This document shows positions 9,066 to 56,424 of a DNA stretch of 64,000 nt, in pieces. The position numbers were made by a program, and so were the translations under genes. Each line of letters starts with the position of its first letter. The first letter of the stretch is position 1. The stretch spans positions 245,458,001-245,522,000 of the forward strand of contig NC_067403.1 in the NCBI RefSeq assembly GCF_016432865.1, written 5' to 3'. The stretch is from Antechinus flavipes (lineage: Eukaryota). The notes beneath the pieces are model-generated. The model was not told the origin of the DNA. It saw only the letters and a program-made list of their open reading frames with translations, and did not search any database.

Positions 9066-9869
9066 TTGACAGCGGTGCAAATAGAATGGTTAATGACTTT
9101 ATTAACTACCTTGATTTGCTTGAGCATCCTTACTATCCAGAGGAGGCCAGATTGATCTGGGAATCAGAATCAGCCATGCAGGAGGAAAACTTAATATGAT
9201 TTCCATTGGACATTTAAATCCTTTGCAGTATTTGTTTGTTGAACCCTAGAGCCCATTCTGCTGTGCTGGAAACAACTCCGCTGATTAAAGTTAACCTCCA
9301 ATCCAGTGACCAAACCTAATGAGGACATTATAAGACTTCTGAGATATATCCCAGCACAGGGGACCTACCATGGCCACACCTGAATGGACCATATGTGATT
9401 ACAATGCTGCAACTCTCTCTCTCCTCCCCCCCACCAACCCTGATCTGTGTTTTCTCTCTTTATAACATCTTCTGCCTAACTCAGTTCTAACTGTTGCTCT
9501 CATGCATATCTGTCTGCTTAGGGGGTAACAAACGAAGGCCTGCAACCTAACTCATTCTTATGAACAAACACTTGAATATAAAAATATTGAACAGATTATT
9601 AATTCACAACTATTAATTTACTAAATGGTGATAAAGTTCAGATAGAGAAATAGAAGGGGGGAATCGAGAAACGAAGGGGAAGTAAGAGCAACAGTGGGAA
9701 TAAATAAGAAATATTTAGCATGCGATCAGTTAGAATAGGATATGGAACGCTAACAGGGGCCATTGCATCAGATTTTTCTATGTGTTAAAAATAATTCCTG
9801 TCAATAGTCCACAAGGAAAAAATGAAATTGTACATATAATAACTCCACTTCCTAATCTCTTTTAACCTA

Positions 9870-10117
9870 TTCCTTTGGGAAGCATGATGGTGTGAAAAGA
9901 GGCCTTACTAATGAGTCCCCGGTATTCCTTTGTTTCCCTTGGGAAGATGTCATACATTTGAGATTTTCCCCCCTGAATTACATGAGGTGGGAGACATGTA
10001 ATTTACTATTAAACAGAGAGTCCTAGATGCTTCAGGAAATGAGCAAATACTCTAGCAAGATCCATGGGGCTGGGCCACATGAGCTCTGAGCAGAGATTTT
10101 CTCCTCAGCAGGTAGAT
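9870..10117 (+). promoter_or_regulatory. Candidate OR promoter and non-coding exon 1 donor for gene 2
   Basis: Homeodomain site TAATGA 9909-9914, O/E (EBF) palindrome TCCCTTGGGA 9935-9944, conserved donor ctcagcag|GTagat at 10112. Confidence 0.65.
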
Positions 10118-10142: not shown

Positions 10143-10178
<36 letters not shown>

Positions 10179-13425: not shown

Positions 13426-13465
<40 letters not shown>

Positions 13466-13512
13466 TTTAAGTGTGTATATATATTGTGCAACAGAGGAAC
13501 TTGAAAAGATAT

Positions 13513-13552
<40 letters not shown>

Positions 13553-13560
13553 TTTTTAAC
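13426..13560. repeat. (TG)n and (AT)n microsatellites
   Basis: Direct reading. Confidence 0.95.

Positions 13561-16871: not shown

Positions 16872-16932
<61 letters not shown>
16872..16932. repeat. (TA)n microsatellite within L1
   Basis: Direct reading. Other TA tracts at 11153-11210 and 47568-47590; poly-T at 702-726; poly-A at 17707-17733. Confidence 0.95.
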
Positions 16933-16934
<2 letters not shown>

Positions 16935-17702: not shown

Positions 17703-17735
<33 letters not shown>

Positions 17736-19352: not shown

Positions 19353-20450
19353 AAAGAGTTGTTATTAAATTGTTTTTTTTTAATTGTACCCAAAAATGAA
19401 ACAAACTTGAAATTTGATGAAGGCAGAAGAAACTGGGCTCTTCTTATAAATTAATCTTAAAATTATATTCAATTAATTCAGTTTAATATTTTGTTAACTT
19501 TTAGAAGTACTCACACAATCAATTTTAACAATTGTTTAATAATTGATATCAGTCATGAATTTATTAAAATCCTTACCTGATTTTCACCATGACAATTTTC
19601 TTAACAAATTGCCATATTGATATTTAAATTTGGATGGATTTTCTCAGAAGAGATACATTTGTCACTATATTGTTCAACAAGTAATGTTTAAGAGCCTTCT
19701 ATGAGTCAAGATCTTTGCTAATTGCTGAGGATATTGAAAAATAATAGGCAAAAAACAATGCAAGTTCTCAAGAACTATGTTTAGCAAATGAGGACACATG
19801 AAAATCACTATTTACAAGCAAAGTATAGACAGGATAAATTATTTTTCTTCAGCAGAGAGGTGTATATACTGAAATCAAGAGGGCTGGGATAGATTTTCTA
19901 TGAAATTACTATCTGATATAAATAAAGTTCCTTAGAAGTGGTTACTCATTGTTTTGTATGTACTTAGTACGTTTCTACTATTTGTGAGAAATAGCAAGGA
20001 AAATAAAATTTCATTGCATGCAATTATTCATTTTCTTAACTCAAGGATCATAGCTTTAAATGTAGAAGGCACCTCACAGTGCTCTCTCATATATCTACCT
20101 GGATATGGATGGAAATTTTGTATTCAATTGTACTTTTTGAGTTTAATATTTAACTTCCCTCCATTTTTACATCTGGAAATTCAATATATCAAGCCTCCAT
20201 AATTTTTTTTTTTTTTTTGCCAATTCCAAGGTGTGAAGTCTTCCTGAAAAATTAAACAATCAGCTCTTTTAAATCCATCTGAAAAGATCAGGAATTAGAT
20301 AAAATTAACTCTCCAAATATAAGATCATTTGCTCCAAACACTTAAAAATAAAAATACCTAAATCCTAGGATATACTGATTTCCTTAAATTGCAAATTCTA
20401 GGAAATCGTTCTTGGCCTTATAAACTGTTTTCTTACTTGCCCCATAGCAG

Positions 20451-21413
20451 ATGAAACTGATTAAACATGTTCCAGGAAATCTCTCCCATGTGACCACATT
20501 CATTCTTATTGGAGTCTCAGATCATCCAGAGCTTCAACTTCCCCTCTTCTTCATCTTCTTAGCAATCTATGGAGTGACAGTGACTGGAAATGTGGGAATC
20601 ATCACACTCACTGGTATAGATTCTCGACTTCAAACTCCCATGTACTTTTTCCTCAGACACTTGGCAATCATCAATCTTGGCAATTCTACTGTCATTGCTC
20701 CCCAGATGCTGGTTAATTTCTTGGTGGAGAAGAAAACCATTTCCTACTATGGATGTGCAACCCAACATGGAGGTTTCTTAGTGTTCATTGTTGCTGAAGT
20801 TTTCATGTTGGCTGCTATGGCCTATGACCGTTATGTGGCTATTTGTAATCCTCTATTATACATGGTTGTTGTATCACGGAAAGTTTGCTTTCTACTCGTC
20901 ATCCTTACATATTCCTACAGTTTAGCTACAGCAGTGACTGTCACTTCCTGTGTTTTTTCAATGTCCTACTGTTCTTCCAATGTCATTAATCATTTTTACT
21001 GTGATAATGTCCCTTTGTTAGTTTTATCTTGCTCTGCTACACATATGCCAGAAACGGTAGTTTATATCTCTACAGCTAGTAATCTCTTCTTTTCCATGAT
21101 AATTGTCCTGGTGTCCTACTTCCAGATCATCTTGGCCATCCTGAGGATACGTTCAGCAGAAGGAAGACGGAAAGCTTTCTCTACCTGTGCTTCCCACATG
21201 ACAGCTGTCACTGTTTTCTATGGGACACTCCTTTTCATGTATTTGCAGCCTCAGTCAAACCATTCCTTAGATACTGATAAAATGGCTTCAGTGTTTTATA
21301 CACTAGTGATCCCCATGCTGAATCCTATGATCTATAGTATGAGGAACAAGGATGTAAAGGAGGCACTGAAGAGAGTCCTCATCAACTCTTGTCGAACTTT
21401 TAAAAACATGTAA
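20451..21413 (+). CDS. OR8J3: Olfactory receptor OR8J3-like (gene 2, type A), 320 aa
   Basis: Intact ORF with the same motifs; 19 aa differences from gene 1 by my manual count. Confidence 0.95.
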   Translation: MKLIKHVPGNLSHVTTFILIGVSDHPELQLPLFFIFLAIYGVTVTGNVGIITLTGIDSRLQTPMYFFLRHLAIINLGNSTVIAPQMLVNFLVEKKTISYYGCATQHGGFLVFIVAEVFMLAAMAYDRYVAICNPLLYMVVVSRKVCFLLVILTYSYSLATAVTVTSCVFSMSYCSSNVINHFYCDNVPLLVLSCSATHMPETVVYISTASNLFFSMIIVLVSYFQIILAILRIRSAEGRRKAFSTCASHMTAVTVFYGTLLFMYLQPQSNHSLDTDKMASVFYTLVIPMLNPMIYSMRNKDVKEALKRVLINSCRTFKNM

Positions 21414-21679
21414 TATGATAAATATTTGAGTAAATAGAGTCATCATCTGAGAAAGCACTTCTCAAATTACAATTGTTATCCATATCAATATAATTTAGCA
21501 TATACCCCTTTTTATGACAATGTTCTTAGTGTTTACTTATCATAATCAGATTATTGGTTCAAAATATGGTTTATTTTTATTTCTAGTTATACATTTGCAG
21601 GCCATCTGCAACAAAATTTTTTTTTTCATTCCTCTAGAATTGAGGTATATAAACCTCTTACTATTATTAGTTTGATAAT

Positions 21680-25700: not shown

Positions 25701-26864
25701 GATAAACAATTTTCATCGTGTTTCACTACACTGCTCATAACTTTTCAATGGCTCCCACAAACTTTCAGGAAAAGTTGAAAATTACTTTTGTGTTATTTGC
25801 TGTTTACAAAGCTTTTTTTTTTTTTGGCATGTTTTACAATTCTTATTTGATTTGATTTCGTTTTCTCAACTGAGAAGTAGTTGTTATCAACATTATTTTA
25901 AAAACTGAGTAAGCAGAGAAGTAACTGTCTCAGTTTTTTTTTTTTTTTTTTTTGATAGTTCTGAGGTTGAATTTTCTGACTTAGGGCAGGCACTTAATAC
26001 CTATTTATTGAGTTATTGATAACTGGAATGATAAGTAGCCCCAAAGAAAGACTGGCAGTGACAAGAACAAAGAATTCACGGAAAAGATCTTAGATTAAAA
26101 GGAGATATTCCTGCCCCAAAGCTGGTTCCTGAAGAGGAGAGATTATAACTCTGTTAGATAATTGAAAGTTATGTAATGAGTGGGTCAATAAGACATTTGA
26201 ATTAAAATGCCTGTTTAAGTGATAACTGCTTCTACCTTGCCACTTGCTACTAAACAAACATCTGATGACTATTTAGTTGAAGTTCAAGTTAACCTCCAAC
26301 CTAGTGGCCAAATCTAATGAGAATATTATAAGACTTCTGAGATATAGCTCAGTCCAGGGGAACCTATCAATGGACACAATTGACTAGACCACTATGTGAT
26401 TACCATGCTGAAACTAAACCCCACCCCCAACCATGATCATGCTTTCTGTCTTTATAACCCCTGCTGCCTAACTCAATTCTAACTGTTGCTTCCATGTATG
26501 TCTTCCTGCTTAAGGGGAATAAACACATGCCTAAAACCTAACTCTTTCTTATGGACATACAATTGAATATGAAAAAATTGAATAGATTGTTAATTCATAA
26601 ATATTAATTCACTAAATGATGGTAAAGTTCAGATAGCAAGCAGAAGGGAGCAATCGAGGAAGGAAGGGGAAGAGAGAGCAACAATAAGAGTAAATAAGAA
26701 ATATTTAGCATGAGACCAATTAGAATGGGATGTAGGACAGCTAAGACTGAGTCATTGCATCAGATTTTTTTATGTGTTAAAAATAATTCCTGGCAATAGT
26801 CCACAAGGAAAAAAGTGTTGTACATATAACAACACCAATTCCCAAACTCTTTTAAAGATATTCC

Positions 26865-27095
26865 TTTGGGGATATTCCACAGGATGATGTGAAAAGAGAC
26901 ATTACAGTTGAGTTCCTAGTATTCTTTTGTTCCCCTTGGGAAGATGGCATACATTTGAGATTTTTTTTCTGAATTACATAATTATTATTAAAAGAAGGTT
27001 TCAGAAGCTTCAGGAAATGAGAAAATACCCTAGCAAGATCCATGGGTCTAGGCCATATGAGTTCTGAGCAGAGATTTTCTCCTCAGCAGGTATAT
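26865..27095 (+). promoter_or_regulatory. Candidate OR promoter and exon 1 donor for gene 3
   Basis: O/E-like CCCCTTGGGA 26932-26941; donor ctcagcag|GTatat at 27090. Confidence 0.6.
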
Positions 27096-30099: not shown

Positions 30100-31055
30100 T
30101 GACTATAGAAATGTAAATTGAGATACCTCTGAGATACCACTATACCTCTTAGGTTGGCTAATATGGCAGTAAAAGATAATGATAAATGTTGAAGGGGAAA
30201 TAGGGAAATTGGGACACAAATACGTTACTGATGGAGTTGTGAAGTGATCCAACCATTTTGAAGAACAATTTGAAGCTATGCTCAAATGGCTATCAAACTA
30301 TGCATCCCCTTTGATCTAGCAGTCTCTTTATTGGGTTTGTATCCCAAATACATGAAAAAAAGTAAAAAAAGACCCACATGTACAAAAATGTTTGTAGCAT
30401 CCCTTTTTGTAGTGGCAAGGGATTGGAAAGGAAGTGGTTACCTATCAGTTGGGGAATGAATGCTGAAGACTTTATGATATGTGACCATTCTATAAGTAAT
30501 TATCAACAGGCTGATTTCAGAAAGGCCTGGCAAGATTTACACAAACTGATGGTTAGTGAAGTGAATAGAACCAAGAGAACACTGTACATAGAAAAAAAAC
30601 AAACAAAACAAAACATTATGTCATTATCAATTGTGATGCCCTTAGATCTTCTCAATCATAAGATGATTCCTGTCAATATGCCATATGCATTCAGAAAGAG
30701 GATTATGGGGATTGAATGTAGCTCACAGTCTAGTACTTTTATCATTTTTGTTGTTGTTTGCTTGCTTCCCCTCCTCCCCCCCCCTCGCTCTCTCGCTCTC
30801 TCTTCTTTTACTGTTTTGAGCTGATTGTTTTTTCTTGTGTAGCATGTTAAAGGAACAAATATGTTTAGAAGAATTGCTCAGGTTTAGCCTATATTTATAT
30901 AAAGGTTTAACCTATAGTTATATATTTAACCTACACTTTAGGGAAAGAGAATTAAAAGAAAGGAAGGAGAAAAATTGGAATAAAAAGTTTTGCTATTGCA
31001 AATGTTGAAAACTATATTTACATGTATTTTAAAAATAATTATTAATTTTTTAAAT
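30100..31055 (+). mobile_element. 5'-truncated L1 (ORF2 end plus 3' UTR); copies at 40975-41910 and 53085-54025
   Basis: ctgagataccactatac...gataaatgttg...cccacatgtacaaaaatgtttgtagca, typical L1 ORF2 C-terminus with stops. Confidence 0.85.
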
Positions 31056-32039
31056 TGTACCCAGGAATTAAACAAAGTTGAAGTTTGATCAGGACAGAGG
31101 AGAGTGGCTCTTCTTATAATTAAATTTTAAAATTATGTTCAATTAATCCAGTCTAATATTTTATTTATTTTAGAAGTATTCATATGACTACAATGGAATT
31201 GATACGAAGTATGAATTTATTAAAATCCCCAGATGATTTTCCCCATGGCAATTGTCTTAACAAATTTCAAGACTAATATTTAACATTTTGATTAATTTTC
31301 TCAGGAGATATTTTTTTCAGGAAAAAAAATGGTTAAGAGCCTTCTGTGTGTCAAGATCTTTTCTAATTGCTGGGTATATTAAAAAAAATAAAATTAAAAA
31401 ACAAGAACCATGCTCAGCTAATGAGGAAACATGAAAACCATTGTGTATAAGCAAAATATAGACAATGAATTATAGATAAATAGGGGAGATGGGGTAACGG
31501 CTTCCTAAAAAAATAACTAGAATTTAAGTAAAGTGACTAATAACTATTTTATCATTTTCTATAAACTTAGCATATTTCTAATAAAAATGAGAAATACAAA
31601 GGTAAATGAAATTTTCATTGTATGCAATTATTCATTTTCTTAACTTAATGATCAAATATTTAGATGTGGAAGACTCCTGACATTACTCTCATTTATCTAG
31701 CTAGCTATGGGTAGAAAATTTGTATTCAATTTGTACTTTGAATTTAATATTTATTAACATTTCCCTCCATTTTAAAATCTAGACATTCAACAACATAATA
31801 AATTTTTTAAAAATTCCTTGATTTCTCTTTTTTGCTAATTCCAAGGTATGAATTTTCACTAAAAAATTTGCCAATCAGTTCTTATGAACTGATTTCAAAA
31901 CCTCAGGAATCAGATAAAATATCTCTCCAAATTTAAGACAGCCTTTTCCAAATGATTAACAACAACAATATTTAATCCTAAAATATAGCAGTTTACTTAA
32001 GTTGCCCGTTCTAGGAAATCATTTTTTGCATTCTAAACT

Positions 32040-32171
32040 GTTTTCTCATTTAATTTCATAGCGGATAAAACTGATCAAACATGTTTCAGGAAATCTTCCC
32101 ATGTGAGCACATTCATTCTCATTGGAGTCTCCAAGCATCCAGAGCTTCAACTTCCTCTCTTCTTCATCTTC
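32040..32171 (+). pseudogene. OR 5' stub (splice acceptor plus about 105 nt of a type-A OR8J CDS) upstream of gene 3
   Basis: catagcggATAaaactgatcaaacATGtttcaggaaatc...cttcttcatctt aligns to the start of gene 2; the first ATG is changed to ATA at 32065. Confidence 0.9.
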
Positions 32172-32472
32172 AATTTCTTAAGTCAATATAATTTAAAAAA
32201 TCATAAATGTTATACTTGCTAATTTCCAAAATATACATTCTCACACTCAAAATTTAACAGTCAACTCTTTGAACACATCTAAATAATCTAGAAATCAGAA
32301 AAAAAAATCTGTCTAAATCTTATATAGGTTTTTCAAAAGAGTTAAAAAGAAAAAAAAAGCTTAAACGTGGGATAGAGTGGTTTACTACAGTGGTTGCAAC
32401 TTCTGGCAAATCAGCTTCGGCCTTCTAAACTCTTTTCCTATTTATTCCCATAGCAGATGAAATCAATCAAAA

Positions 32473-33420
32473 ATGTTTCAAGGAAATCTCTCTCATGTGA
32501 CCACATTCATTCTCATTGGAGTCTCAGAAAATCCAGAGCTTCAACTTCCCCTCTTCTTCATCTTCTTTGCAATCTATGGAGTGACCGTGACTGGAAATGT
32601 GGGAATTATCATACTCACTAGTATAGATTCTCACCTTCAAACTCCCATGTACTTTTTCCTCAGACACTTGGCAATCATCAATCTTGGCAATTCTACTGTC
32701 ATTGCTCCCCAGATGCTGGTTAATTTCTTGCTGGAGAAGAAAACCATTTCCTACTATGGATGTATAATCCAACATGCAGGTTTCATAATTTTCATAGTTG
32801 CTGAGGTTTTCATGTTGGCTGCTATGGCCTATGACCGCTATGTGGCTATTTGTAATCCCCTGTTATATATGGTTGTGGTATCACGGAAGGTTTGCATCCT
32901 ACTTGTCATCCTCATATATATTTATGGCTTCTCAACATCAGTGACAATCACCTCTTGGGTTTTCTCGATGTCCTACTGTTCTTCCAATGTCATTAATCAT
33001 TTTTACTGTGACAATATACCTTTGTTAGCTTTATCTTGCTCTGCTACTCATATACCAGTGACTATAGTCTATATCACTGCAACTACCGATCTCTTCGTTT
33101 CTTTGACAATTATCCTGGTGTCCTACTTCCAGATCATCTTGGCCATCCTAAGGATACGTTCAGCAGAAGGAAGAAAGAAAGCCTTTTCCACTTGTGCTTC
33201 CCACATAACAGCTGTCACTATTTTCTATGGGACACTCTTTTTTATGTATGTGCAGCCCCAGTCAAACCATTCCTTAGATACTGACAAAATGGCTTCAGTG
33301 TTTTATACACTAGTAATCCCAATGTTGAATCCCTTGATATACAGTCTGAGGAACAAGGATGTAAAGGAGGCTCTGCAGAGAGTTCTTACTAACTCTTGCC
33401 AAACTTTTAAAAACATGTAA
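32473..33420 (+). CDS. OR8J3: Olfactory receptor OR8J3-like (gene 3, type B N-terminus MFQGNLS), 315 aa
   Basis: Intact ORF with all OR motifs. Met-to-NxS spacing matches human OR8J (MAPENFT). Confidence 0.95.
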   Translation: MFQGNLSHVTTFILIGVSENPELQLPLFFIFFAIYGVTVTGNVGIIILTSIDSHLQTPMYFFLRHLAIINLGNSTVIAPQMLVNFLLEKKTISYYGCIIQHAGFIIFIVAEVFMLAAMAYDRYVAICNPLLYMVVVSRKVCILLVILIYIYGFSTSVTITSWVFSMSYCSSNVINHFYCDNIPLLALSCSATHIPVTIVYITATTDLFVSLTIILVSYFQIILAILRIRSAEGRKKAFSTCASHITAVTIFYGTLFFMYVQPQSNHSLDTDKMASVFYTLVIPMLNPLIYSLRNKDVKEALQRVLTNSCQTFKNM

Positions 33421-33644
33421 TTTGACAAATATTTGTGTAAACAAAGAGATTCACAATCTGAAGTATCACCTCTCAAATTATGATTGTTATCCATGTAAAT
33501 ATAATTCAGCATATAGCCCTTTGTTTATGATAATGTTCTTGGTCTTTATTTATAATAATGTGATCACTGGTTTAAAGCATGTGATTTATTTTAAATTCTT
33601 TTTTTTCCCCATCCCACCACCATTGAGGCATATAACTTTGCTAC

Positions 33645-36945: not shown

Positions 36946-37967
36946 AGATTTTGATTAAATTCAACCATTCACAAATTTATATATAAACTATAGTCATAAT
37001 TGAGGTTAAGTTGAACTCTTTTAATCACAATTTGTAGTTTTAAAAAGGAAAGGTTCTACACAATCCTCTTGCAACTAGCCATTAATGAGATCTGTTCATC
37101 AGAATACAATATTCAATGACTGTTTGATAACTGGAATGATAAGTAGCCCCAAAGAAAGACTGGCAGTGACAAGAACAAAGAATTCACTGAAAAGATCCTA
37201 GATTAAAAGGAGATATTCCTGCCCCAAAGCTGGTTCCTGAAGAGGAGAGATTATAACTCTGTTAGGTAATTGAAAGTTATGTAGTGAGTGGGTCAATAAG
37301 ACATTTGAATTAAAATACCTGTTTAAGTGATAACTGCTTCTATCTTGCCACTTGCTACTAAACAAACATCTGATGACTGTTTAGTTCAAGTTCAAGTTAA
37401 CCTCCAACCTAGTGGCCAGATCTAATGAGAATATTATAAGATTTCTGAGATATAGCTCAGTCCAGGGAAACCTATCAATGGACACAATTGAAAAGACCAG
37501 AATGGTGATTACCATGCTGAAACTAAACACTGCCCCAAGCCATGATCGTGCTTTCTGTCTTTATCACCTCTGTTGCCTAATTCAATTTTAACTGTTGCTT
37601 GCATGTATGTTTGCCTGCTTAAGAGGAATAAACACATGCCTAAAACCTAACTCTTTCTTATGGACATACAACTGAATATGAAAATATTAGATAAATTATT
37701 GATTCACAAATATTAATTTACTAAATGATAGTAAAGTTCAGATAGCAAGCAGAAGGGAGCAATCAAGGAAGGAAGGGGAAGAGAGAGCAACAATAAGAGT
37801 AAATAAGAAATATTTAGCATGAGACCAATTAGAGTGGGATATAGGAAAGCTAAGACTGAGTCATTGCATCAGATTTTTCTATGTGTTAAAAATAATTCCT
37901 GGCAATAGTCCACAAGGAAAAAGTGTTGTACATATAACAACACCAATTCCCAAACTCTTTTAAAGAT

Positions 37968-38216
37968 ATTCCTTTGGGGAGCAGGATGATGTGAAAAGAG
38001 GCCTTACAGTTGAGTCCCTGGTATTCCTTTGTTTCCCTTGGGAAGATGTCATACATTTGAGATTTTTTGTTTCTGAATTACATAAGGTAGGAGACATGTA
38101 TTTCATTATTAAAAGAGGTCTTCGGAGGCTTCAGGAAATGAGCAAAAACCCTAGCAAGATCCATGGGGCTAGGCCATATGAGTTCTGAGCAGAGATTTTC
38201 TCCTCAGCAGGTATAT
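37968..38216 (+). promoter_or_regulatory. Candidate OR promoter and exon 1 donor for gene 4
   Basis: O/E TCCCTTGGGA 38034-38043; donor GT at 38211. Confidence 0.6.
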
Positions 38217-41200
38217 GTACTATCCCACTGTACTTGTTTCTGATTTGTTATTATTATTATTAGTAGTAGTAATAGTAGTAATAGCATTTATTATTTAGCA
38301 TGTTCATTATTATTAGTTGAAAAATGTAATCAAAATCAAAATAATTTTCAATGTGCTAAAAAGGCTACTATTATGCTGCATAGACAGCCATTTAAAGTTT
38401 AGAATGTTAGTTCTGTGTACATTTTGTTTGGATAAATCCTAGAATTGAGCACAGTTGAAATTCTTCTTCATAAAATGTTATGATCTTAAAATAGAAAAAA
38501 AAAAATAGCTGTGGAGCCTTTACTATTTTTATCTGGAGCATTTTTTTCCAGTGCTGTACCAGATTTCTTTCAATGATTCTACAACTCTTATTCATACTCT
38601 GAGAGTGTTGTCTGGGATACTGGGATGTTAATCAGTTCAGGATGAATCACATGGCTAATCCAAGACAGGGACCACAACATAAACATTTTTTTAGGTCTTG
38701 AGTAGCAGTTCCCACAGCAGATTCATGCATGGAAAAAGCAGGTCTTACTTTGTTCTGTGAGAATGGTTTCCAAGTTAATTGTCTCAAATCTTAAGGGTCA
38801 TTGAGGCTTGTGATAATTCAGTGGGTACAGAACCAGAGTTACTATGGCAGTAACAGGAGTAAAGTTGGTTACAAGAAACAGGAATTGTGAGCATGACAAA
38901 AAAAAAAAAAAAATATGATGAATCACTTTAGGCTTATTCATCCCTCAGCAAAGTCTGGTTAAAGGACTACATCTTGACAGAAGAGGAACTCATCCAGAGC
39001 CCAAATGATTGTTGTTATGCCAAGCTGAAGTTCCAGCCTGCTTGTTGGTCTTTCATGTAGAAACAGGGTGTCGCCAAATAATTTGTGACAATATTAAACA
39101 GGAAGATGAAAACTGAATATTGTTAAATGCAAAACAGTTGACATCACAGTAGGACTTCTTAAACTTCTACTTGTGAATACTAATCACCTGAGAAAATTTT
39201 TAATGACCCCAAGTAAATAAATATGTGAAATAGGTATCCAAATCAAACAATTTCAGATAATAAATAATAATTTGACAAGCTTCAAGTTGAGTTATGAGTT
39301 GCCATATTGGCCCACAGTTTAAGAAGGTGGGCGCTAGAGGATTGAGTATTTGGAAACAAATAACAAACAACTCATTTAACAATTCCTAGGTGAAAAGAGT
39401 CATGAAGTTTTTGCTAGTTCAATATAAATTATCTGAGTTGGAGAAATAGTTGAATTAAAGTCTTCCTTCTATTCAAGAGAATATGCTATTAATGGATGGT
39501 TTTGTAGATATTATATGAAGATTAAAGGTGTTTGAAGGTAGAATTTTATGAGCTTATTCTGAATGTTCTGATGATTAAAGATTTGAATTATCTGGGATGC
39601 GTGGGTAAAAACAGTTCGTTCCACAGATGATGACAGATAATGTTATAAAGGAATCTGTGATAATTCTCCTAATACCTACTTAACTCTTTCCTGTTACAAT
39701 AATTTATTGCATTCCATAATATAATTATTTCTTATCTCAAACTACAGTAAAGTGGCCTGTTAAGACAAGAAAAAATAGACCATCTAAAATGATATACCTT
39801 CTATTTAGAGATTTGGGGTCAAGACAGAGGATGAACATTTCCACTTTTCTGAGAATAAACACAATGAATATGTAGTAAGAGTCGAAATCTTCATAAGGAA
39901 ATAGAATTTTACAACTAGGAAGGTCATTGTAGTGACACTGGGGAATAATATCAGAAGTACTGAGTAAAGTTAGTTATCTACTATATCACTAGAAAGGAGG
40001 GATTAAAGACGAATTTCAGCTTTGATATGACTTGATCAGGACCTTTTCTTGGGTCTCAATATCTTCTTGGATTTCTGCTGATCTATCTCTTTGTACTTTT
40101 GATTAGCCTTTGATTAAAGTTGAACTCATTGGGACTTGGCAGAATAAATCTAATCCCTCAACACAGGACACTGGTGGGACTGTTGAGACTTTGATCTTTT
40201 TTTTTGTTTGTTTGTTTTTTTGTTTTTTTTTTTTGTTTGTTTGTTTTGTTTTTGTTTTTGTTTTTGTTTATTTTTTCAGTGAGTATATTGTGTCAGAGAG
40301 AAACTTGAAAACATATTTTTTCCAAATGTCCTTTGAATGTCAGTCTCTTTGGATTTATCAATGCAAGGTGGATACTTAAAGAAACAAACACACACCCTAT
40401 GATGTATTTTATTTGATCATATTCACCATCATTTTAGTTTCAATATTGCCTAAACTTTGAACAAAATTTAAGTCACAATCATGCCTTTATAATATCTTCT
40501 GGAATCCAGGTTTAAACTGTGGACTCAAAATACTGCAGCTTATCACAAATGAGATAATTTAGCTTCTTTTTTCTATCAGTCAATAATTTACAGAAGCTCA
40601 GAAAATACTTTCTTCTTAGAATCAATTGAATGGATTCCAAGTTGTAAATTCATCTCACCTTGGACTCTACTTGAAAAACTCTCAGATTCCACAAATAAGT
40701 CATTTTAGTTTAGAAATTTAATTTTTAGCATAATTTACCTTAATTTTACCAAGATTTCCACTTCTACTTCTCTCTCTATATATTTTTTCTTAGAATTAGT
40801 GTTCCTTCTTGTACTTTGCATGGAGCTAGAATCAGTATTGCGCAAGGATATGAATTGGCTTTCAAAAGAAAGAAATATATAAATAGATTTTAAATTTAAC
40901 CTGCATTATTGTTATTTTCTATATGTACAAGCATTTCTACTCATATGAAAAAAAAATGTTCTATATCATTATTGACTATAGAAATGTAAATTGAGATACC
41001 TCTGAGATACCACTATACACCTCTTAGATTAGCTAATATGGCAGTAAAAGATAATGATAAATGTTGGAGGGGAAGTAGGGAAATTGGGACACAAATAAAT
41101 TACTGATGGAGTTGTGAAGTGATCCAACTATTTTGAAGAACAATTTGAAACTATGCTCAAATGGCTATCAAACTATGCATTCCCTTTGATCTAGCAGTCT

Positions 41201-42910
41201 CTTCACTGGGTCTGTATCCCAAATACATCAAAAAAAGAAAAAAAGAAAATGAAAAAGACCCACATGTACAAAAATGTTTGTAGCATCCCTTTTTGTAGTG
41301 GCAAGGAACTGGAAACTGAGTGATTGTCTATCAGTTGGGAAATGAATGCTGAAGACTTTATGATATGTGACCATTCTATAAGTAATTATCAACAGGCTGA
41401 TTTTAGAAAGGCCTGGCAAGATTTACATAAATTGATGGTTAGTGTAGTGAATAGAACTAAGAGAACACTGTACCCAGAAAAAACAACATTATGTCATTAT
41501 CAACTATGATGCCCTTAGATCTTTTCAATCATAAGATGATTATTGTCAATATGCCATATGCATCCAGAAAGAGGATTATGGGGATTGAATGTAGCTCACA
41601 GTTTAGTATTTTTATTGTTGTTTGCTTGCTTTTTTCCCCTCTCTCTCCCTCTCACTCTCTCTTCTTTTACTGTTTTGAACTGATTTTTTTTTCTTGTGTA
41701 GCATGTTAAAGGAACAAATATGTTTAGAAGAATTGCTCAGGCTTAACCTATATTTATATATAGGCTTAACCTATATTTATATATTTAACCTATACTTTAG
41801 GGAAGGAGAATTAAAAGAAAGGAAGGAGAAAAATTGGAATAAAATGTTTTGCAATTGCAAATGTTGAAAACTATATTTACATGTATTTTAAAAATAGATT
41901 TTAATTTTTTAATTGTACCCAGGCATTAAACAAACTTGGAGTTTGATCAGGACAGAGAGAGTGGCTCTTCTTATAATTAAATCTTAAAATTATGTTCAAT
42001 TAATCCAGTCTAATAATTTATTTATTTTATAAGTATTCATATGACTACAATGGAATTGATATCAAGTATGAATTTATTAAAATCCTCAGATGATATTCCC
42101 CATGACAATTGTCTTAAGAAATCGCAAGACTAATATTTAATTTTTTGATTGATTTTCTCAGAAGAGAGATGTTTGTTCAAGAAAAAAATGGTTAAGAGAC
42201 TTCTGTGTGTCAAGATCTTTTCTAATTGCTGGGTACATTAAAAAAATAAAATTAAAATGCTCAGTTAATGAGGAAACATGAAAACCATTGTGTATAAGCA
42301 AAATATGACAATGAATTATAGATAAATAGGGGAGATGGGGTTCTGAAATCAAGGGGAATTGGGAATGGCTTTCTAAAAAAATAACTTGAATTTAAGTAAA
42401 GTGACTAATAACTATTTTATCATTTTCTATAAACCTAGCCTATTTCTAATATATTTGAGAAATACAAAGGTAAATTAAATTTTCATCGTATGCAATTATT
42501 CATTTTCTTAACTTAATGGTCAGATACTTAGGTGTGGAAGACTCCTGACATTACTCTCATTTGTCTAGCTAGCTATGGGTAGAAAATTTGTATTCAATTT
42601 GTATTTTGAATTTAATATTTATTGTTAACATTTCCCTCCATTTTAAAATCTAGACATTCAACAACATAATAAATTTTTAAAATTTCCTTAATTTCTCTTT
42701 TTTGCTAATTCCAAGATATGAATTTTCACTAAAAAAATTTGCCAATCAGTTCTTTTGAACCGATTTCAAAACCTCAGGAAACAGATAAAATATCTTTCCA
42801 ATTTTAAGACAGCCTTTTCCAAACAATTAAAAATAACAATATTTAATCCGGAAATATAACAGTTTACTTAAGTTGCACTTTCATGGAAATCATTCTTTGC
42901 ATTCTAAACT

Positions 42911-43043
42911 ATTTTCTCATTTAATTTCATAGCAGATAAAAGTGATCAAACATGTTTCAGGAAATCTCTCCCATGTGAGCACATTCATTCTCATTGGAGT
43001 CTCTAAGCATCCAGAGCTTCAACTTCCTCTCTTCTTCATCTTC
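42911..43043 (+). pseudogene. OR 5' stub upstream of gene 4
   Basis: Same stub; TAGCAG retained, ATA at 42936, ATG at 42952. Confidence 0.9.
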
Positions 43044-43348
43044 AATTTCATAAGTCTATATAATTTACAAAATCATAAATCTTATACTTGCTAATTTCCA
43101 AAATGTACATTCTCACACTCAAAATTTAACAGTCAACTCTTTGAACACATCTCAATAATCTAGAAATCAGAAAAAAAAAAAATCTGTCTAAATCTTATGC
43201 AGGATTTTCAAAAGAGTTAAAAAGAAAAAAAAAAGCTTAATCTTAGGATATAGTGATTTATTACAGTGGTTGCAACTTCTGGCAAATCAGCTTTGGCCTT
43301 CTAAACTCTTTTCCTTTTTATTCCCATAGCAGATGAAATCAATCAAAA

Positions 43349-44296
43349 ATGTTTCAAGGAAATCTCTCTCATGTGACCACATTCATTCTCATTGGAGTCT
43401 CAGAAAATCCAGAGCTTCAACTTCCCCTCTTCTTCATCTTCTTTGCAATCTATGGAGTGACCGTGACTGGAAATGTGGGAATCATCACACTCACTAGTAT
43501 AGATTCTCAACTTCAAACTCCCATGTACTTTTTCCTCAGACACTTGGCAATCATCAATCTTGGCAATTCTACTGTCATTGCTCCCCAGATGCTGGTTAAT
43601 TTCTTGCTGGAGAAGAAAACCATTTCCTACTATGGATGTGTAATCCAACATGCAGGCTTCTTAGTTTTCATAGTTGCTGAGGTTTTCATGTTGGCTGCTA
43701 TGGCCTATGACCGCTATGTGGCTATTTGTAATCCCCTGTTATATATGGTTGTGGTATCACGGAAGGTTTGCATCCTACTTGTCATCCTCATATATATTTA
43801 TGGCTTCTTAACATCAGTGACAGTTACCTCTTGTGTTTTCTCAATGTCCTACTGTTCTTCCAATGTCATTAATCATTTTTACTGTGACAATATCCCTTTG
43901 TTAGCGTTATCTTGCTCTTCTACTCATATACCAGTGACTATAGTCTATATCACTGCAGCTATCAATCTCTTCGTTTCCTTGACAATTATCCTGATATCCT
44001 ACTTCCAGATCATCTTGGCCATCCTGAGGATACGTTCAGCAGAAGGAAGAAAGAAAGCCTTTTCCACTTGTGCTTCCCATATGACAGCTGTCACTATTTT
44101 CTATGGGACACTTCTTTTTATGTATGTGCAGCCCCAGTCAAACCATTCCTTAGATACTGACAAAATGGCTTCAGTGTTTTATACACTAGTAATCCCTATG
44201 TTAAATCCTTTGATATATAGTCTGAGGAACAAGGATGTGAAGGAGGCTCTGAAGAGAGTTCTTACTAACTCTTGCCAAACTTTTAAAAACCTGTAA
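43349..44296 (+). CDS. OR8J3: Olfactory receptor OR8J3-like (gene 4, type B), 315 aa
   Basis: Intact ORF with all OR motifs. Confidence 0.95.
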
Positions 44297-44554
44297 TTTG
44301 ATAAACATTTGTGAAAATGAAGAGATTCACAATCTGAAGTATCATCTCTCAAATTATGATTGTTATCCATCTAAATATAATTCACCATATGGCCCTTTGT
44401 TTATGATAATCTTCTTGGTCTTTGTAATAATCAGATCACTGGTTTAAAGCATGTGATTTATTTTAAATTCTTGTTAAACATCTACAGGTCATCTGCAACA
44501 AAGCCTTTTTTTTTCCCCATCTCGCCACCATTGAGGCATATAACTCTGCTACTA

Positions 44555-48780: not shown

Positions 48781-50124
48781 AATAAAGATTATATTTTCCA
48801 AAATGTAGCTTGGTAGAGATATTGATAGAAAATGTCCAGAATAATAACACAGATGAGAGGACACTCTTAGAATAAGTTGGAAAAAGGATGACAGACTTGA
48901 TAAGTAGTTCTTGCCATCTTTTCTAATTTACATTTAATTTTAGATTCTTCAATATGTTGATTATTCCTTTTCAGAGATAGTATAGAGATAAAAAGATTAT
49001 TTTTGAACATATTTGTTTACTGGCTTTGCTTTATTTTTCCCTAAGATTGATTATATTTTACCTTTCTTTGTATATCCAATGCTTAGTATATTCTCTAAAA
49101 TGATAATATATATGTCAGATTCCAAGTTAAGACCACTGGCCTAGATTTTTATTAAATTCAACCATTTACAAATTTATATATAAACTATAATCATAATTGA
49201 GGTTAAGTCAAACTCTTTTACTCACAATTTGTATTTTTAAAAAGGAAAGGTTCTTCACAATCCTCTTGCAACTAGCAATTAATGAGATCTGTTCATCAGA
49301 ATACAACATTTAATGACTGTTTGATAACTGGAATGATAAGTAGCCCCAAAGAAAGACTGGTAGTGAAAAAAACGAAGAATTCATTGAAAAGATCCTAGAT
49401 TAAAAGGAGATATTCCTGCCCCAAAACTGGTTCCCGAAGAGGAGAGATTATAACTCTGTTAGGTAATTGAAAGTTATGTAGTGAGTGGGTCAATAAGACA
49501 TTTGAATTAAAATGCCTGTTTAAGTGATAGCTGCTTCTACCTTGATACTTGCTACTAAACAAACATCTGATGACTGTGTAGTACAAGTTCAAGTTAACCT
49601 CCAACCTAGTGGCCAGATCTAATGAGAATATTATAAGATTTCTGAGATATAGCTCAGTCCAGGAAATCTATCAATGGACACAATTGAATAGACCATTATG
49701 TGATTACTATGCTGAAACTAAACCCCGCCCCCAACCATGATCATGCTTTCTGTCTTTATAACCTCTGCTGCCTAACTCAATTCTTACTGTTGCTTCCATG
49801 TATGTTTGCCTGCTTAAGGGGAACAAACACAGGCCTAAAACCTAACTGTTTCTTATAGACATACAACTGAATATGAAAATATTAAATAGATTATGGTAAA
49901 GTTCAGATAGCAAGCAGAAGGGAGCAATCAAGGAAGGAAGGGGAAGAGAGAGCAACAAATAAGAAATATTTAGCATGAGACCAATTAGAATGGGATGTAG
50001 GAAAAGTTAAGATTGAGTCATTGCATCAGATTTTTCTATGTGTTAAAAATAATTCCTGGCAATAGTCCACAAGGAAAAAGTGTTGTACATATAACAACAC
50101 CAATTCCCAAACTCTTTTAAAGAT

Positions 50125-50373
50125 ATTCCTTTGGGGAGCAAGATGATGTGAAAAGAGGCCTTACAGTTGAGTCCCTGGTATTCCTTTGTTTCTCTTGGGA
50201 AGATGTCATACATTTGAGATTTTTTTTTTCTGAATTACATAAGGTGGGAGACATGTAATTTATTATTAAAAGAGGGCTTCAGATGCTTCAGGAAATGAGC
50301 AAATACCCTAGTAAGATCCATGGGGTTAGGCCATATGAGTTCTGAGCGGAGATTTTCTCCTCAGCAGGTATAT
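50125..50373 (+). promoter_or_regulatory. Candidate OR promoter and exon 1 donor for gene 5
   Basis: O/E variant TCTCTTGGGA 50191-50200; donor GT at 50368. Confidence 0.55.
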
Positions 50374-53300: not shown

Positions 53301-55044
53301 AGCAGTCTCTTTATTGGGTATGTATCCCAAATACATAAAAAAAAAAAAAGTGAAAAAGACCCAATTGTACAAAAAATGTTTGTAGCATCCCTTTTTGTAG
53401 TGGCAAGGAAATGGAAACTGAGTAGTTGCCTATCGGTTGGGGAATGAAAGCTGAAGACTTTATGATATGTGACCATTCTATAAGTAATTATCAACAGGCT
53501 GATTTCAGAAAGGCCTGGCAAGATTTACACGAACTGATGGTTAGTGAAGTGAATAGAACCAAGAGAACACTGTGTACATAGAAAAAACATTATGTCATTA
53601 TCAACTATGATACTCTTAGATCTTTTCAATCTTAAGATGATTTGTTTCAATATGCCATATGCATCCAGAAAGAGGATTATGGGGATTTAATGTAGCTCAC
53701 AGTCTAGTATTTTTATCATTTTTGTTGTTGTTTGCTTGCTTTTTTCCCCCCTCTCCTGCTCTCTTGCTCTCTCTTCTTTTACTGTTTTGAGCTGATTTTT
53801 TTTTCTTGTGTAGCATGTTAAAGGAACAAATATGTTTAGAAGAATTGCTCAGGTTAACCTATATTTATATGTAGGTTTAACCTATATTTATATATTGAAC
53901 CTACACTTTAGGGAAGGAGAATTAAAAGAAAGGAAGGAGAAAAATTGGAATAAAATGTTTTGCAATTGCAAATGTTGAAAAAATATTTTTACATGCATTT
54001 TAAAAATAGTTCTTAAATTTTTTAATTGTACCCCAGAATTAAACAAACTTGAAGTTTGATCAGGACAGAGGAGAATGGCTCTTCTTATAATTAAATCTTA
54101 AAATTCTGTTCAATTAATCCAGTCTAATATTTTATTTATTTTAGAAGTATTCATACAATTACAATGGAATTGATATCAAGTATGAATTTATTAAAATCCC
54201 CAAATGACTTTCCCCATGGCAATTGTCTTAACAAATTTCAAGACTAATATTTAACATTTTGATTGATTTTCTCAGAAGAGAGATATTTGTTCAGGAAAAA
54301 AAAATGGTTAAGAGACTTCTGTGGGTCAAGATCTTTTCTAATTGCTGGGTATTTAAAAAATAAAATTAAAAAACAAGAACCACACTCAGCTAATGAGGAA
54401 ACATGAAAACCATTGTGTACAAGCAAAATATAGACAATGAATTATAGATAAATAGGGGAGATGGGGTGCTGAAATCAACAGGAATTGGGAATGGCTTCCT
54501 AAAAACATAACTAGAATTTAAGTAAAGTGACTCATAACTATTTTATCATTTTCTATAAACCTAGCATATTTCTAATATATTTGAGAAATACAAAGATAAA
54601 TGAAATGGTCATTGTATGCAATTATTCATTTTCTTAACTTAATGATCAGATATTTAGATGTGGAAGACTCCTGACATTACTCTCATTTGTCTAGCTAGCT
54701 ATGGGTAGAAAATTTGTATTCAATTTATACTTTGAATTTAATATTTATTGTTAATATTTCCCTCCATTTTAAAATCTAGACATTCAACAACATAATAAAT
54801 TTTTTTTAAAAAAATTCCTTGATTTTTCTTTTTTGCTAATTCCAAGGTATGAACTTTCCTCCCTAAAAATTTTGCCAATCAGTTCTTTTGAACCCATTTC
54901 AAAACCTCAGGAATCAGATAAAATAACTCTCCAACTTTAAGACAGCCTTTTCCAAACAATTAAAAATAACAATATTTAATCCTAAAATATAGCAGTTTAC
55001 TTAAGTTGCCTGTTCTAGGAAATCATTTTTTGCATTTTAAACTG

Positions 55045-55176
55045 TTTTCTCATTTAATTTCATAGCGGATAAAACTGATCAAACATGTTTCAGGAAATCT
55101 CTCCCATGTGAGTACATTCATTCTCATTGGAGCCTCCAAGCATCCAGAGCTTCAACTTCCTCTCTTCTTCATCTTC
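55045..55176 (+). pseudogene. OR 5' stub upstream of gene 5
   Basis: Same stub; ATA at 55069, ATG at 55085, GTGAGT at 55108. Confidence 0.9.
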
Positions 55177-55476
55177 AATTTTGTAAGTCTGTATAATTTA
55201 CAAAATCATAAATCTTATACTTGCTAATTTCCAAAATGTACATTCTCACACTCAAAATTTAACAGTCAACTCTTTAAACACATCTCAATAATCTAGAAAT
55301 CAGAAAAAAAAAATCTGTCTAAATCTAATACAGGTTTTTCAAAAGAGTTAAAAAAAAAAAAAGCTTAATCCTAGGATATAGTGGTTTACTACAGTGGTTG
55401 CAACTGCTGGCAAATCAGCTTTGGCCTTCTAAACTCTTTTCCTATTTATTCCCATAGCAGATGAAATCAATCAAAA

Positions 55477-56424
55477 ATGTTTCAAGGAAATCTCTCCCAA
55501 GTGACCACATTCATTCTCATTGGAGTCTCAGAAAATCCAGAGCTTCAACTTCCCCTCTTCTTCATCTTCTTTGCAATCTATGGAGTGACCGTGACTGGAA
55601 ATGTGGGAATCATCACACTCACTAGTATAGATTCTCAACTTCAAACTCCCATGTACTTTTTCCTCAGACACTTGGCAATCATCAATCTTGGCAATTCTAC
55701 TGTCATCGCTCCCCAGATGCTGGTTAATTTCTTGCTGGAGAAGAAAACCATTTCCTACTATGGATGTGTAATCCAACATGCAGGCTTCTTAGTTTTCATA
55801 GTTGCTGAGGTTTTCATGTTGGCTGCTATGGCCTATGACCGCTATGTGGCTATTTGTAATCCCCTGTTATATATGGTTGTGGTATCACGGAAGGTTTGCA
55901 TCCTACTTGTCATCCTCATATATATTTATGGCTTCTCAACATCAGTGACAGTTACCTCTTGTGTTTTCTCAATGTCCTACTGTTCTTCCAATGTCATTAA
56001 TCATTTTTACTGTGACAATATCCCTTTGTTAGCTTTATCTTGCTCTGCTACTCATATACCAGAGACTATAGTCTATATTTCTGCAGGTACTAATCTCTTC
56101 CTTTCCTTGACAATTGTCCTGATGTCCTACTTCCAGATCATCTTGGCCATCCTGAGGATACGTTCAGCAGAAGGAAGAAAGAAAGCCTTTTCCACTTGTG
56201 CTTCCCACATGACAGCTGTCACTATTTTCTATGGGACACTCCTTTTTATGTATGTGCAGCCCCAGTCAAACCATTCTTTAGATACTGATAAAATGGCATC
56301 AGTGTTTTATACACTAGTAATCCCTATGTTGAATCCTTTGATATACAGTCTGAGGAACAAGGATGTAAAGGAGGCTCTGAAAAGAGTTCTTACAAACTCT
56401 TGCCAAACTTTTAAAAACTTGTAA
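55477..56424 (+). CDS. OR8J3: Olfactory receptor OR8J3-like (gene 5, type B), 315 aa
   Basis: Intact ORF with all OR motifs; 10 aa differences from gene 4. Confidence 0.95.

What the first reader, a model, noticed from the sequence alone, without database searches (positions are those of the whole stretch)
32040..32475. A dead OR start apparently recycled as a uORF-bearing micro-exon in front of genes 3, 4 and 5
About 392-397 bp upstream of each type-B gene lies a stub of a type-A OR with an intact acceptor (ttttctcatttaatttcatag). It has lost its own start (ATG to ATA) and changed coding catGTGACc to catGTGAG(c/t), a donor consensus (full GTGAGT at 55108). This defines 41-42 nt candidate cassette exons at 32062-32102, 42933-42974 and 55066-55107, followed by an intron of about 350 nt. 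In genes 4 and 5 the exon's remaining ATG would give MFQEISPI(R)*, and with either NAGNAG acceptor its stop is the TGA of the inhibitory upstream ATGA, ending 12 nt before the true start. Inclusion or skipping would therefore change the uORF layout and could act as a splicing-controlled translational switch built from a receptor fragment. The three stubs descend from one event, so shared changes are not independent evidence of selection.
Basis: partly seen in the sequence, partly recalled or inferred. Interest (0 to 1): 0.75.

Follow-up and report, generated by a model that had tools for sequence, protein, structure and literature searches.

The report
Dead smell-receptor stub before three genes
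The stub is the real front end of a dead smell-receptor gene, left when a neighbouring receptor gene was joined to the dead gene's promoter; it could be spliced in as a tiny leader exon, but nothing shows that it is, or that it controls translation.

Summary
About 392-397 bp before each 315-aa receptor gene (B3, B4, B5) lies a truncated copy of a receptor 5' end. It has an intact acceptor, ATG changed to ATA, and GTGACC changed to GTGAG(C/T).

New here:
- The window is Antechinus flavipes.
- The stub is older than the triplication. It sits once before the single ortholog in Sarcophilus and in Sminthopsis. A fourth B-type gene just past the window lacks it.
- The whole stretch from a conserved O/E-site promoter block (about 5.3 kb upstream) to the stub is colinear with gene A2. 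It groups with A2 in trees, whereas the coding body groups with the fourth B-type gene. So the stub marks a promoter-capture fusion and lies in the B genes' 5' intron.
- The stub evolves at the neutral rate.
- The devil has ATGAG in place of the proposed donor, with a different GT 14 nt upstream.
- The proposed uORF layout holds in only 3 of 5 copies.

Use as a leader exon is plausible but unproven, and a selected translational switch is unlikely. uORF-bearing alternative leader exons are the norm in receptor genes. The scan had noted a similar promoter-capture idea in the next window, but not this stub.

The parts
31706..32171 (+). Stub 3: truncated 5' region of a dead A2-like receptor gene (about 350 nt of upstream flank, the acceptor, and the first ~36 codon equivalents)
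   Evidence: Matches A2 20104-20558 at 76.5% over 473 nt and A1 2452-2627 at 86%. Homology ends at 32171.
42568..43043 (+). Stub 4, same structure
   Evidence: 93% identical to stub 3. Colinear with A2 up to 20558, which is codon 36.
54694..55176 (+). Stub 5, same structure
   Evidence: 94% identical to stub 3. 85% identical to the Sminthopsis stub.
32062..32102 (+). Candidate 41-nt micro-exon of gene B3 (1-nt deletion; ATG at 32081)
   Evidence: If spliced, the uORF is 21-22 codons long and overlaps the main start.
42933..42974 (+). Candidate 42-nt micro-exon of gene B4 (ATG at 42952)
   Evidence: The spliced uORF is MFQEISPI(R)*.
55066..55107 (+). Candidate 42-nt micro-exon of gene B5 (ATG at 55085)
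32103..32108 (+). Donor-like GTGAGC of stub 3
   Evidence: Approximate matrix score 4.8, top 0.9% of GT sites in the window.
42975..42980 (+). Donor-like GTGAGC of stub 4
55108..55113 (+). Donor-like GTGAGT of stub 5
   Evidence: Score 5.2, top 0.6% of GT sites. U1 duplex -7.0 kcal/mol.
32454..33420 (+). Coding exon of B3 up to its stop codon. The true acceptor AG is at 32452-32453, the out-of-frame uATG at 32457 and the CDS at 32473-33420.
   Evidence: The stretch from acceptor to ATG has 8% variable columns, as low as the CDS.
43330..44296 (+). Coding exon of B4 up to its stop codon (uATG at 43333, CDS 43349-44296)
55458..56424 (+). Coding exon of B5 up to its stop codon (uATG at 55461, CDS 55477-56424)
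37800..38200 (+). Likely promoter and first exon of B4. Perfect O/E site TCCCTTGGGA at 38034-38043. Candidate exon-1 donor AAG|GTAGGA with its GT at 38087.
   Evidence: Most conserved non-coding block of the unit: 2 variable columns in 60. O/E site. Donor shared by 4 of 5 copies. 86.7% identical to the A2 block against 69.8% to the B6 block.
26691..27079 (+). Same promoter block for B3. A 17-nt deletion after 26981 removes the candidate exon-1 donor.
49957..50357 (+). Same promoter block for B5 (donor AAG|GTGGGA with its GT at 50244)
9701..10101 (+). Paralogous promoter block of gene A2 (O/E site at 9935-9944). This is the lineage from which the B promoter, intron and stub derive.
20451..21413 (+). 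Gene A2 (320 aa), the closest intact relative of the stub

Best explanation
The stub is the leftover 5' end of a dead A2-like OR8J-type receptor gene.

Origin. Before the dasyurid radiation, a deletion or unequal recombination joined two points: codon ~36 of that gene, and a point about 300 bp upstream of the start codon of a B-type gene (about 285 bp upstream of its coding exon). The B gene has since been transcribed from the dead gene's promoter and first exon, about 5 kb upstream. This step is inferred from O/E sites and conservation. In Antechinus the whole unit was later triplicated.

Position and splicing. The stub therefore lies in the last ~400 nt of the B genes' 5' intron. It still carries the native acceptor of that intron. 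One substitution turned a near-donor (GTGACC) into GTGAG, so the stub can in principle be spliced in as a 41-42-nt leader exon.

Most likely status. It is a neutrally drifting relic that is mostly skipped, or included as a minor isoform, without a selected regulatory role. If included, its ATG (purine at -3) would open a short uORF ending 12 nt before the start. That would more likely lower than raise receptor translation.

Shown: the homology, the chimeric origin, the age, the sites and the rates. Inferred: the position of the transcription start, any splicing, and any effect on translation.
For: 1. Chimeric origin.
- The B4 unit 37391-43043 is colinear with the A2 unit 9285-20558. Then 43121-44382 re-aligns with A2 20248-21495.
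- The trees are incompatible. The coding body splits {A1,A2 | B,B6} with 100/100 support. The promoter block splits {A2,B | A1,B6} with 98/96 support.
- Promoter identity is 86.7% to A2 against 69.8% to B6.

2. Age. The stub is present once before the single ortholog in Sarcophilus (two identical assemblies) and in Sminthopsis, with the same ATA.

3. Neutral drift.
- Stub terminal branches are 0.07-0.10, against 0.02-0.03 for the same segment of functional genes.
- The micro-exon 100-nt block is 85-88% identical between species, equal to the background.
- The stub acceptor has 4 of 21 variable columns. The true acceptor-to-ATG stretch has 4 of 48. The far-upstream baseline is 22%.

4. The devil has ATGAG at the donor and still keeps an intact 315-aa gene.

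5. The true acceptor and the CDS are constrained, with 8-9% variable columns. So the B genes are in use and spliced from an upstream exon.

6. The only strongly conserved upstream block holds O/E sites.

7. Leader exons with uORFs are ordinary in receptor genes. [quoted passage not shown] Shum 2015 (PMC4627058) reports uORFs in 67%.
Against: - No RNA data could be examined, so the level of inclusion is unknown and could be high.
- In each of the five copies, exactly one good GT site lies between the stub acceptor and the true acceptor, always 28-42 nt after the stub acceptor. The devil lost one and gained another, CAG|GTAATC.
- Only 4 of 324 single changes to the parental sequence create such a donor, and both changes seen are among them. 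By my rough estimate each step has a chance of about 0.1, judged after the fact. This hints at selection to keep a donor behind the decoy acceptor.
- The micro-exon itself has 5 of 42 variable or gapped columns, which puts it in the lowest 5.5% of upstream windows.
- The transcription start is inferred from motifs and conservation, not observed.
Confidence: 0.6

Rival explanations
1. Tolerated or rescuing leader exon. The stub acceptor, being the native partner of the captured first exon, is used often. Selection keeps a donor just behind it so that the ~350 nt of junk with 2-3 further ATGs is removed. The result is a constitutive or major 28-42-nt leader exon without any switch function.
For: - The acceptor is intact in all five copies, with 15/20 pyrimidines against 16-18/20 for the true acceptors.
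- There is one good donor 28-42 nt downstream in every copy, with turnover in the devil.
- Donor-creating changes are rare: 4 of 324, and 3 of 144.
- An unspliced leader would be 411-416 nt long with 4-5 ATGs.
- The start codon of the dead gene is lost in all copies.
Against: - Each donor event has a chance probability of about 0.1 and was noticed after the fact.
- The stub as a whole drifts neutrally.
- Exons this short are often poorly recognised (general knowledge).
- There are no RNA data.
Confidence: 0.25
2. The stub is an alternatively included cassette exon. Its uORF ends at the TGA of the ATGA and so masks the inhibitory upstream ATG, giving a splicing-controlled translational switch kept by selection.
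For: - The sites and frames are as described in B4 and B5.
- Sminthopsis has the same layout (MFQEISPFR*, 42-nt exon).
- The out-of-frame upstream ATG, 16 nt before the start and opening a 54-codon frame, is present in all B genes.
Against: - The layout fails in B3 (frameshift, 21-22-codon overlapping uORF). It also fails in the devil, which has no GT at the site; with the alternative donor the frame is a 58-codon overlapping one.
- There is no conservation above background.
- The mini-frame is inherited from the parent gene.
- Re-initiation 12 nt after a stop codon is usually inefficient (general knowledge), so inclusion would probably repress translation, not relieve it.
- uORFs are common in receptor leaders in any case.
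Confidence: 0.07
3. The stub is a local tandem duplicate of the B gene's own 5' end. It is not a piece of a different type-A gene, and the upstream promoter has always belonged to B.
For: The stub flank is also 74% identical to B's own upstream region. All units of the cluster are paralogous, so colinearity alone does not decide.
Against: - The stub carries the type-A leader and frame.
- It sits beside A2 and not with the B/B6 clade, which has 98/96 support.
- The promoter and coding-body trees conflict.
- The sister gene B6 has a very different promoter block (69.8% identity).
Confidence: 0.07
4. B transcripts start within or just downstream of the stub, which would act as proximal promoter sequence. 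The stub is then never part of the RNA.
For: The 264 nt from the stub acceptor onward are the least variable stretch of that length in the 2.3 kb upstream: 49 variable columns against a mean of 73 (lowest 2% of windows). A TATATAA-like motif follows the stub.
Against: - In the three-species profile these windows (0.85-0.89 conserved) lie inside the normal intergenic range.
- The true acceptor just before the start codon is as constrained as the CDS, which implies an upstream exon.
- The only O/E-site block lies about 5 kb upstream.
Confidence: 0.08

Closest known systems
Alternatively spliced non-coding 5'-UTR exons of mammalian olfactory receptor genes, with frequent uORFs (Barnes et al. 2020, PMC7055050; Ibarra-Soria et al. 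2014, PMC4154679; Shum et al. 2015, PMC4627058)
   Same: The layout matches: promoter and short first exon kilobases upstream, an acceptor a few nt before the start codon, optional short leader exons, and upstream ATGs and uORFs in most genes.
   Different: Here the candidate exon is recognisably a piece of another receptor gene's coding exon, and there is no transcript evidence for it.
Receptor pseudogene remnants embedded in the transcripts of neighbouring receptor genes, and receptor genes that share 5' exons (Barnes et al. 2020, PMC7055050)
   Same: A dead receptor fragment lies inside the transcription unit of an intact neighbour, and upstream exons or promoters are used by more than one coding exon.
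   Different: The remnants described there lie mostly in 3' UTRs. Here the remnant is a 5' fragment in the 5' intron, and the promoter was taken over rather than shared.
Chimeric genes formed by promoter capture through deletion or unequal crossing-over in tandem gene families (general knowledge)
   Same: The 5' region and the coding body have different phylogenetic histories. There is a sharp breakpoint, and the downstream gene stays under purifying selection.
   Different: No protein chimera results. The captured piece contributes only non-coding sequence and a spare acceptor.
Translational control by alternative 5'-UTR splicing that adds or removes uORFs (review PMC13631847; CD20/MS4A1 preprint 10.1101/2023.02.19.529123, both seen only in the listing)
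   Same: This is the proposed logic: inclusion of a small leader exon changes the set of uORFs.
   Different: Those cases rest on measured isoforms and translation. Here neither exists, and the layout is not conserved.

Membership tests
Truncated olfactory receptor pseudogene fragment | Significant homology to a receptor gene that stops inside the coding region | tested here: met
   473 nt at 76.5% to A2 and 176 nt at 86% to A1. Homology ends at codon ~36.
Truncated olfactory receptor pseudogene fragment | Loss of coding capacity (start codon or frame) | tested here: met
   ATG is ATA in all five copies of three species. Stub 3 has a 1-nt deletion and the devil a 3-nt deletion.
Truncated olfactory receptor pseudogene fragment | Relaxed rate compared with functional paralogs | tested here: met
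   Terminal branches are 0.07-0.10 against 0.02-0.03.
Non-coding 5'-UTR cassette exon of a receptor gene | Lies between the transcription start and the coding exon, on the same strand | tested here: inconclusive
   A conserved O/E-site block and a candidate exon-1 donor lie about 5 kb upstream. The true acceptor is constrained. The start itself was not observed.
Non-coding 5'-UTR cassette exon of a receptor gene | Usable acceptor and donor at both ends | tested here: met
   The acceptor has 15/20 pyrimidines plus TAG in all copies. The donor is in the top 1-2.4% of GT sites in 4 of 5 copies; in the devil it sits at another position. The matrix is an approximation recalled from memory, not MaxEntScan.
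Non-coding 5'-UTR cassette exon of a receptor gene | Junction reads or cDNA that use the sites | not testable with these tools
No transcript-derived contig encodes the B proteins.
uORF-based translational switch by alternative leader splicing | uORF start, frame and stop conserved among orthologs and paralogs | tested here: not met
   The same layout holds in B4, B5 and Sminthopsis only. It differs in B3 and the devil.
uORF-based translational switch by alternative leader splicing | Sequence constraint above the neutral background | tested here: not met
   The block with the micro-exon is 85-88% identical between species, equal to background. The micro-exon alone falls only in the lowest 5.5% of windows.
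uORF-based translational switch by alternative leader splicing | Isoforms that differ in translation | not testable with these tools
   This needs reporters or ribosome profiling.
Promoter-capture chimera | The 5' region and the coding body have conflicting phylogenies, with a defined breakpoint | tested here: met
   Splits {A2,B | A1,B6} (98/96) against {A1,A2 | B,B6} (100/100). Colinearity with A2 up to 43043.
Promoter-capture chimera | The downstream gene remains functional | tested here: met
   Intact 315-aa frames in three species. The CDS has 8.8% variable columns against a 22% baseline. Pfam 7tm_4 E-value 3e-49.
Promoter-capture chimera | Transcription of the downstream gene from the captured promoter | not testable with these tools
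   No RNA data.

The most novel reading that the evidence does not exclude
The stub is a genuine, selected leader micro-exon. After the B gene was placed behind a dead paralog's promoter, the dead gene's own acceptor stayed in use. Selection then removed its start codon and has kept a donor just behind it, replacing it in the devil. A fragment of receptor coding sequence would thus now set the uORF layout, and with it the translation, of a family of receptors.
Probability: 0.08. Interest if true: 0.6.

Novelty: new member of a known kind. Interest (0 to 1): 0.3.

Why it matters
If the micro-exon is used, this is a clean, datable case of two linked things: a tandem-array rearrangement that re-wires a receptor gene to a neighbour's promoter, and the leftover splice signals being dealt with afterwards. 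It has five natural replicates in three species.

As it stands, it mainly shows that the leader architecture of these marsupial receptor genes is the ordinary one, and that the stub is a rearrangement scar. It is a useful marker for annotating the 5' ends of these genes, but not evidence of a new control mechanism.

Tried and rejected
- Outgroup marsupials. Loci for Petaurus, Trichosurus, Macrotis and Notamacropus came back without DNA. The fusion could therefore not be dated beyond 'older than the dasyurid crown'.
- Rfam scan of 31000-33600: only a chance-level hit inside the CDS.
- ORFs on both strands of the stub: only short accidental frames.
- The paper by Young et al. 2003 on receptor ESTs is not held.
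- MaxEntScan is not available. I used an approximate donor matrix recalled from memory and a U1 duplex energy, ranked against all GT sites in the window.
- Local tandem duplication of B's own 5' end: rejected on the trees.
- Stub as proximal promoter: considered and judged unlikely.
- The apparent 'most conserved 264 nt' signal did not stand out in the wider three-species profile.

Full report
**What the window is.** The window holds five intact single-exon olfactory receptor genes on the + strand. A1 (2520-3482) and A2 (20451-21413) encode 320 aa. B3 (32473-33420), B4 (43349-44296) and B5 (55477-56424) encode 315 aa. All match Pfam 7tm_4 (E 3e-49) and are OR8J-like. The exact proteins sit on chromosome record CM028222.1 of Antechinus flavipes (GCA_016432865.2), and the window corresponds to about 245,458,001-245,522,000. 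No fetched contig was taken for human.

**The observation.**
- Acceptor copies ...catag|C open candidate exons at 32062, 42933 and 55066.
- ATG is ATA in all three stubs.
- The catGTGACC of all five intact genes is catGTGAGC in stubs 3 and 4 and catGTGAGT in stub 5.
- Stub 3 has a 1-nt deletion (alignment A1).
- The next intervals are 351, 355 and 350 nt.
- Joined locally, the frame from the remaining ATG reads MFQEISPI(R)* in B4 and B5 and stops at the TGA of ATGA, 12 nt before the start.

The homology is not chance. The stub with its flank matches A2 over 473 nt (76.5%, E 5e-90) and A1 over 176 nt (86%).

Two additions:
- About 350 nt upstream of the acceptor belong to the same block.
- The little ATG...TGA frame (MFQEISPM*) already exists out of frame inside A1 and A2. 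It is inherited and not a new feature.

**Age and distribution.** A fourth B-type gene (B6, P0006) lies at window-equivalent 65489 and has no stub. The single B orthologs of Sarcophilus harrisii (P0135; L007, and L008 from a second assembly) and Sminthopsis crassicaudata (P0136, L009) each have the stub about 390 bp upstream. Both carry the same ATA, and the two devil assemblies are identical there. The event therefore predates the split of these three dasyurids, and the three Antechinus copies come from a later triplication.

**What the stub is.** The B4 unit from 37391 to 43043 is colinear with the A2 unit from 9285 to 20558. That span covers A2's upstream block, its whole intron, its acceptor and its first 36 codons. 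At 43121 the alignment jumps back to A2 20248 and runs through the CDS.

The most conserved non-coding block of the unit lies at 37870-38080, with 2 variable columns in 60.
- It holds a perfect O/E (EBF) site, TCCCTTGGGA, at 38034. The same site stands at 9935 before A2, and a variant at 61536 before B6 (3 matches against 0.47 expected).
- It is followed by a donor-like AAG|GTRGGA shared by four of five copies.
- This block is 86.7% identical to A2's but only 69.8% identical to B6's.

The trees conflict.
- The coding body gives {A1,A2 | B,B6} (100/100).
- The promoter block gives {A2,B | A1,B6} (98/96).
- The stub itself forms a clade (100/99) beside A2, away from the B/B6 clade (98/96).

The simplest reading is that an A2-like gene once lay between A2 and B. 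A deletion or unequal exchange then joined its codon ~36 to a point about 300 bp before B's start codon. B has since used the dead gene's promoter, first exon and intron. The stub acceptor is thus the native acceptor of that intron, and it lies 392-397 nt before B's own acceptor. The position of the transcription start is inferred from motifs and conservation, not seen.

**Is the stub under selection?** As a whole, no.
- Its terminal branches (devil 0.10, dunnart 0.07) are three to five times longer than those of the same segment in functional genes (0.02-0.03).
- The 100-nt block with the micro-exon is 88, 85 and 87% identical between species, like the intergenic background of about 85-93%.
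- In a 9-kb three-species profile its windows (0.59, 0.85, 0.89) lie inside the normal range.
- The true acceptor-to-ATG stretch has 4 of 48 variable columns and the CDS 8.8%, against a 22% baseline. The stub acceptor has 4 of 21.
- The micro-exon alone has 5 of 42 variable or gapped columns, in the lowest 5.5% of windows. The 264 nt from the acceptor onward are in the lowest 2% of the nearest 2.3 kb. This weak signal is not confined to the exon.
- With a stub-clade tree length of about 0.27 changes per site, roughly two of the eight key letters (AG, ATG, GT, +5 G) should have changed by chance. One has. The comparison has little power either way (my inference).

**The splice sites.**
- Acceptors: 15 of 20 pyrimidines in every stub copy, against 16-18 for the true acceptors, with the same TCTAAAC-like branch region.
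- Donors: I had no MaxEntScan. I used an approximate matrix recalled from memory plus the U1 duplex energy, ranked against all 2803 GT sites of the window.
- GTGAGC and GTGAGT rank in the top 0.9% and 0.6%. The parental GTGACC ranks in the top 7%.
- The devil has ATGAG, so that donor is dead there. A devil-specific A-to-T change 14 nt upstream makes CAG|GTAATC (top 2.1% by the matrix, top 1.2% by U1 pairing).
- In each of the five copies this is the only GT scoring 3 or more between the two acceptors, and it always lies 28-42 nt after the stub acceptor.
- Only 4 of 324 single changes to the parental sequence make such a donor. Both observed changes are among them.
- From the branch lengths, each step has a chance probability of roughly 0.1 (my estimate, made after seeing the data). 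This is the one hint that a donor behind the spare acceptor may be favoured.

**uORF layout.**
- Without the exon, all B leaders already carry an out-of-frame ATG 16 nt before the start (pyrimidine at -3), opening a 54-codon overlapping frame.
- With the exon, B4, B5 and the dunnart give an 8-9-codon uORF ending at ATGA.
- B3 gives a 21-22-codon uORF that overlaps the start.
- The devil gives either nothing or, with its own donor, a 28-nt exon and a 58-codon overlapping frame.
- If the stub acceptor were used with no donor, the leader would be 411-416 nt long with 4-5 ATGs.
- The proposed layout is thus not conserved. Since re-initiation 12 nt after a stop is usually poor (general knowledge), inclusion would more likely lower translation.

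**Comparison with what is known.**
- Barnes et al. [quoted passage not shown] They find uORFs in 54.5% of human and 86.4% of mouse genes, alternative transcripts in most multi-exon genes, genes sharing 5' exons, and pseudogene remnants embedded in neighbours' UTRs.
- Shum et al. 2015 (PMC4627058) found uORFs in 67% of expressed mouse receptor mRNAs.
- A uORF-bearing optional leader exon would therefore be ordinary. What is particular here is its origin from a receptor coding fragment, and the promoter-capture history behind it.

**What could not be done.**
- No transcript-derived contig encodes these proteins.
- Outgroup loci had no DNA.

**Verdict.** The stub is a neutral-looking scar of a promoter-capture fusion that lies in the B genes' 5' intron (confidence about 0.6). 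It may be included as a small leader exon, possibly with a donor kept for tidiness (about 0.25). A selected translational switch is unlikely (about 0.07).

Noticed in passing
L005:10001-10948 (window-equivalent 65489-66436); window 61536-61545: A fourth B-type receptor gene (P0006, 88% identical to B3) lies just past the window end. It has no stub and has its own, much more diverged O/E-site block about 4 kb upstream.
   Followed up: partly
window 26974-26990: Copy B3 has a 17-nt deletion that removes the candidate exon-1 donor AAG|GTRGGA kept in B4, B5, devil and dunnart. B3 also has the longest coding branch of the three copies (0.029 against 0.012) and the 1-nt deletion in its stub. It may be on its way out.
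   Followed up: partly
window 32457-32621, 43333, 55461: All B genes, in all three species, keep an out-of-frame ATG 16 nt before the true start, opening a 54-codon overlapping frame. In the A genes the same ATG is the in-frame start.
   Followed up: partly
L004:10001-10129 and 17762-17824 (Sarcophilus): The RefSeq model of the devil's A1 ortholog (P0131, 364 aa) adds 43 residues from an exon 7.6 kb upstream. That exon is spliced to the same acceptor, 3 nt before the usual ATG. It lies 1.4 kb upstream of the O/E block.
   Followed up: partly
P0008 / P0139 / P0137 (Petaurus breviceps): The sugar glider's B-like gene has RefSeq isoforms. One replaces the first four residues (MVQG becomes MSGR) through an exon about 7 kb upstream spliced into the coding exon. 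No DNA was available to inspect.
   Followed up: no
window 42713-42721 and equivalents: A donor-like AAG|GTRTGR site about 215 nt upstream of the stub acceptor is shared by four of the five copies (B3, B5, devil and dunnart, not B4). Its meaning is unknown.
   Followed up: no
window 55180-55188: Stub 5 alone has a GTAAGT hexamer at the end of the stub homology (ttt|GTAAGT). This is a second possible donor, specific to that copy.
   Followed up: no
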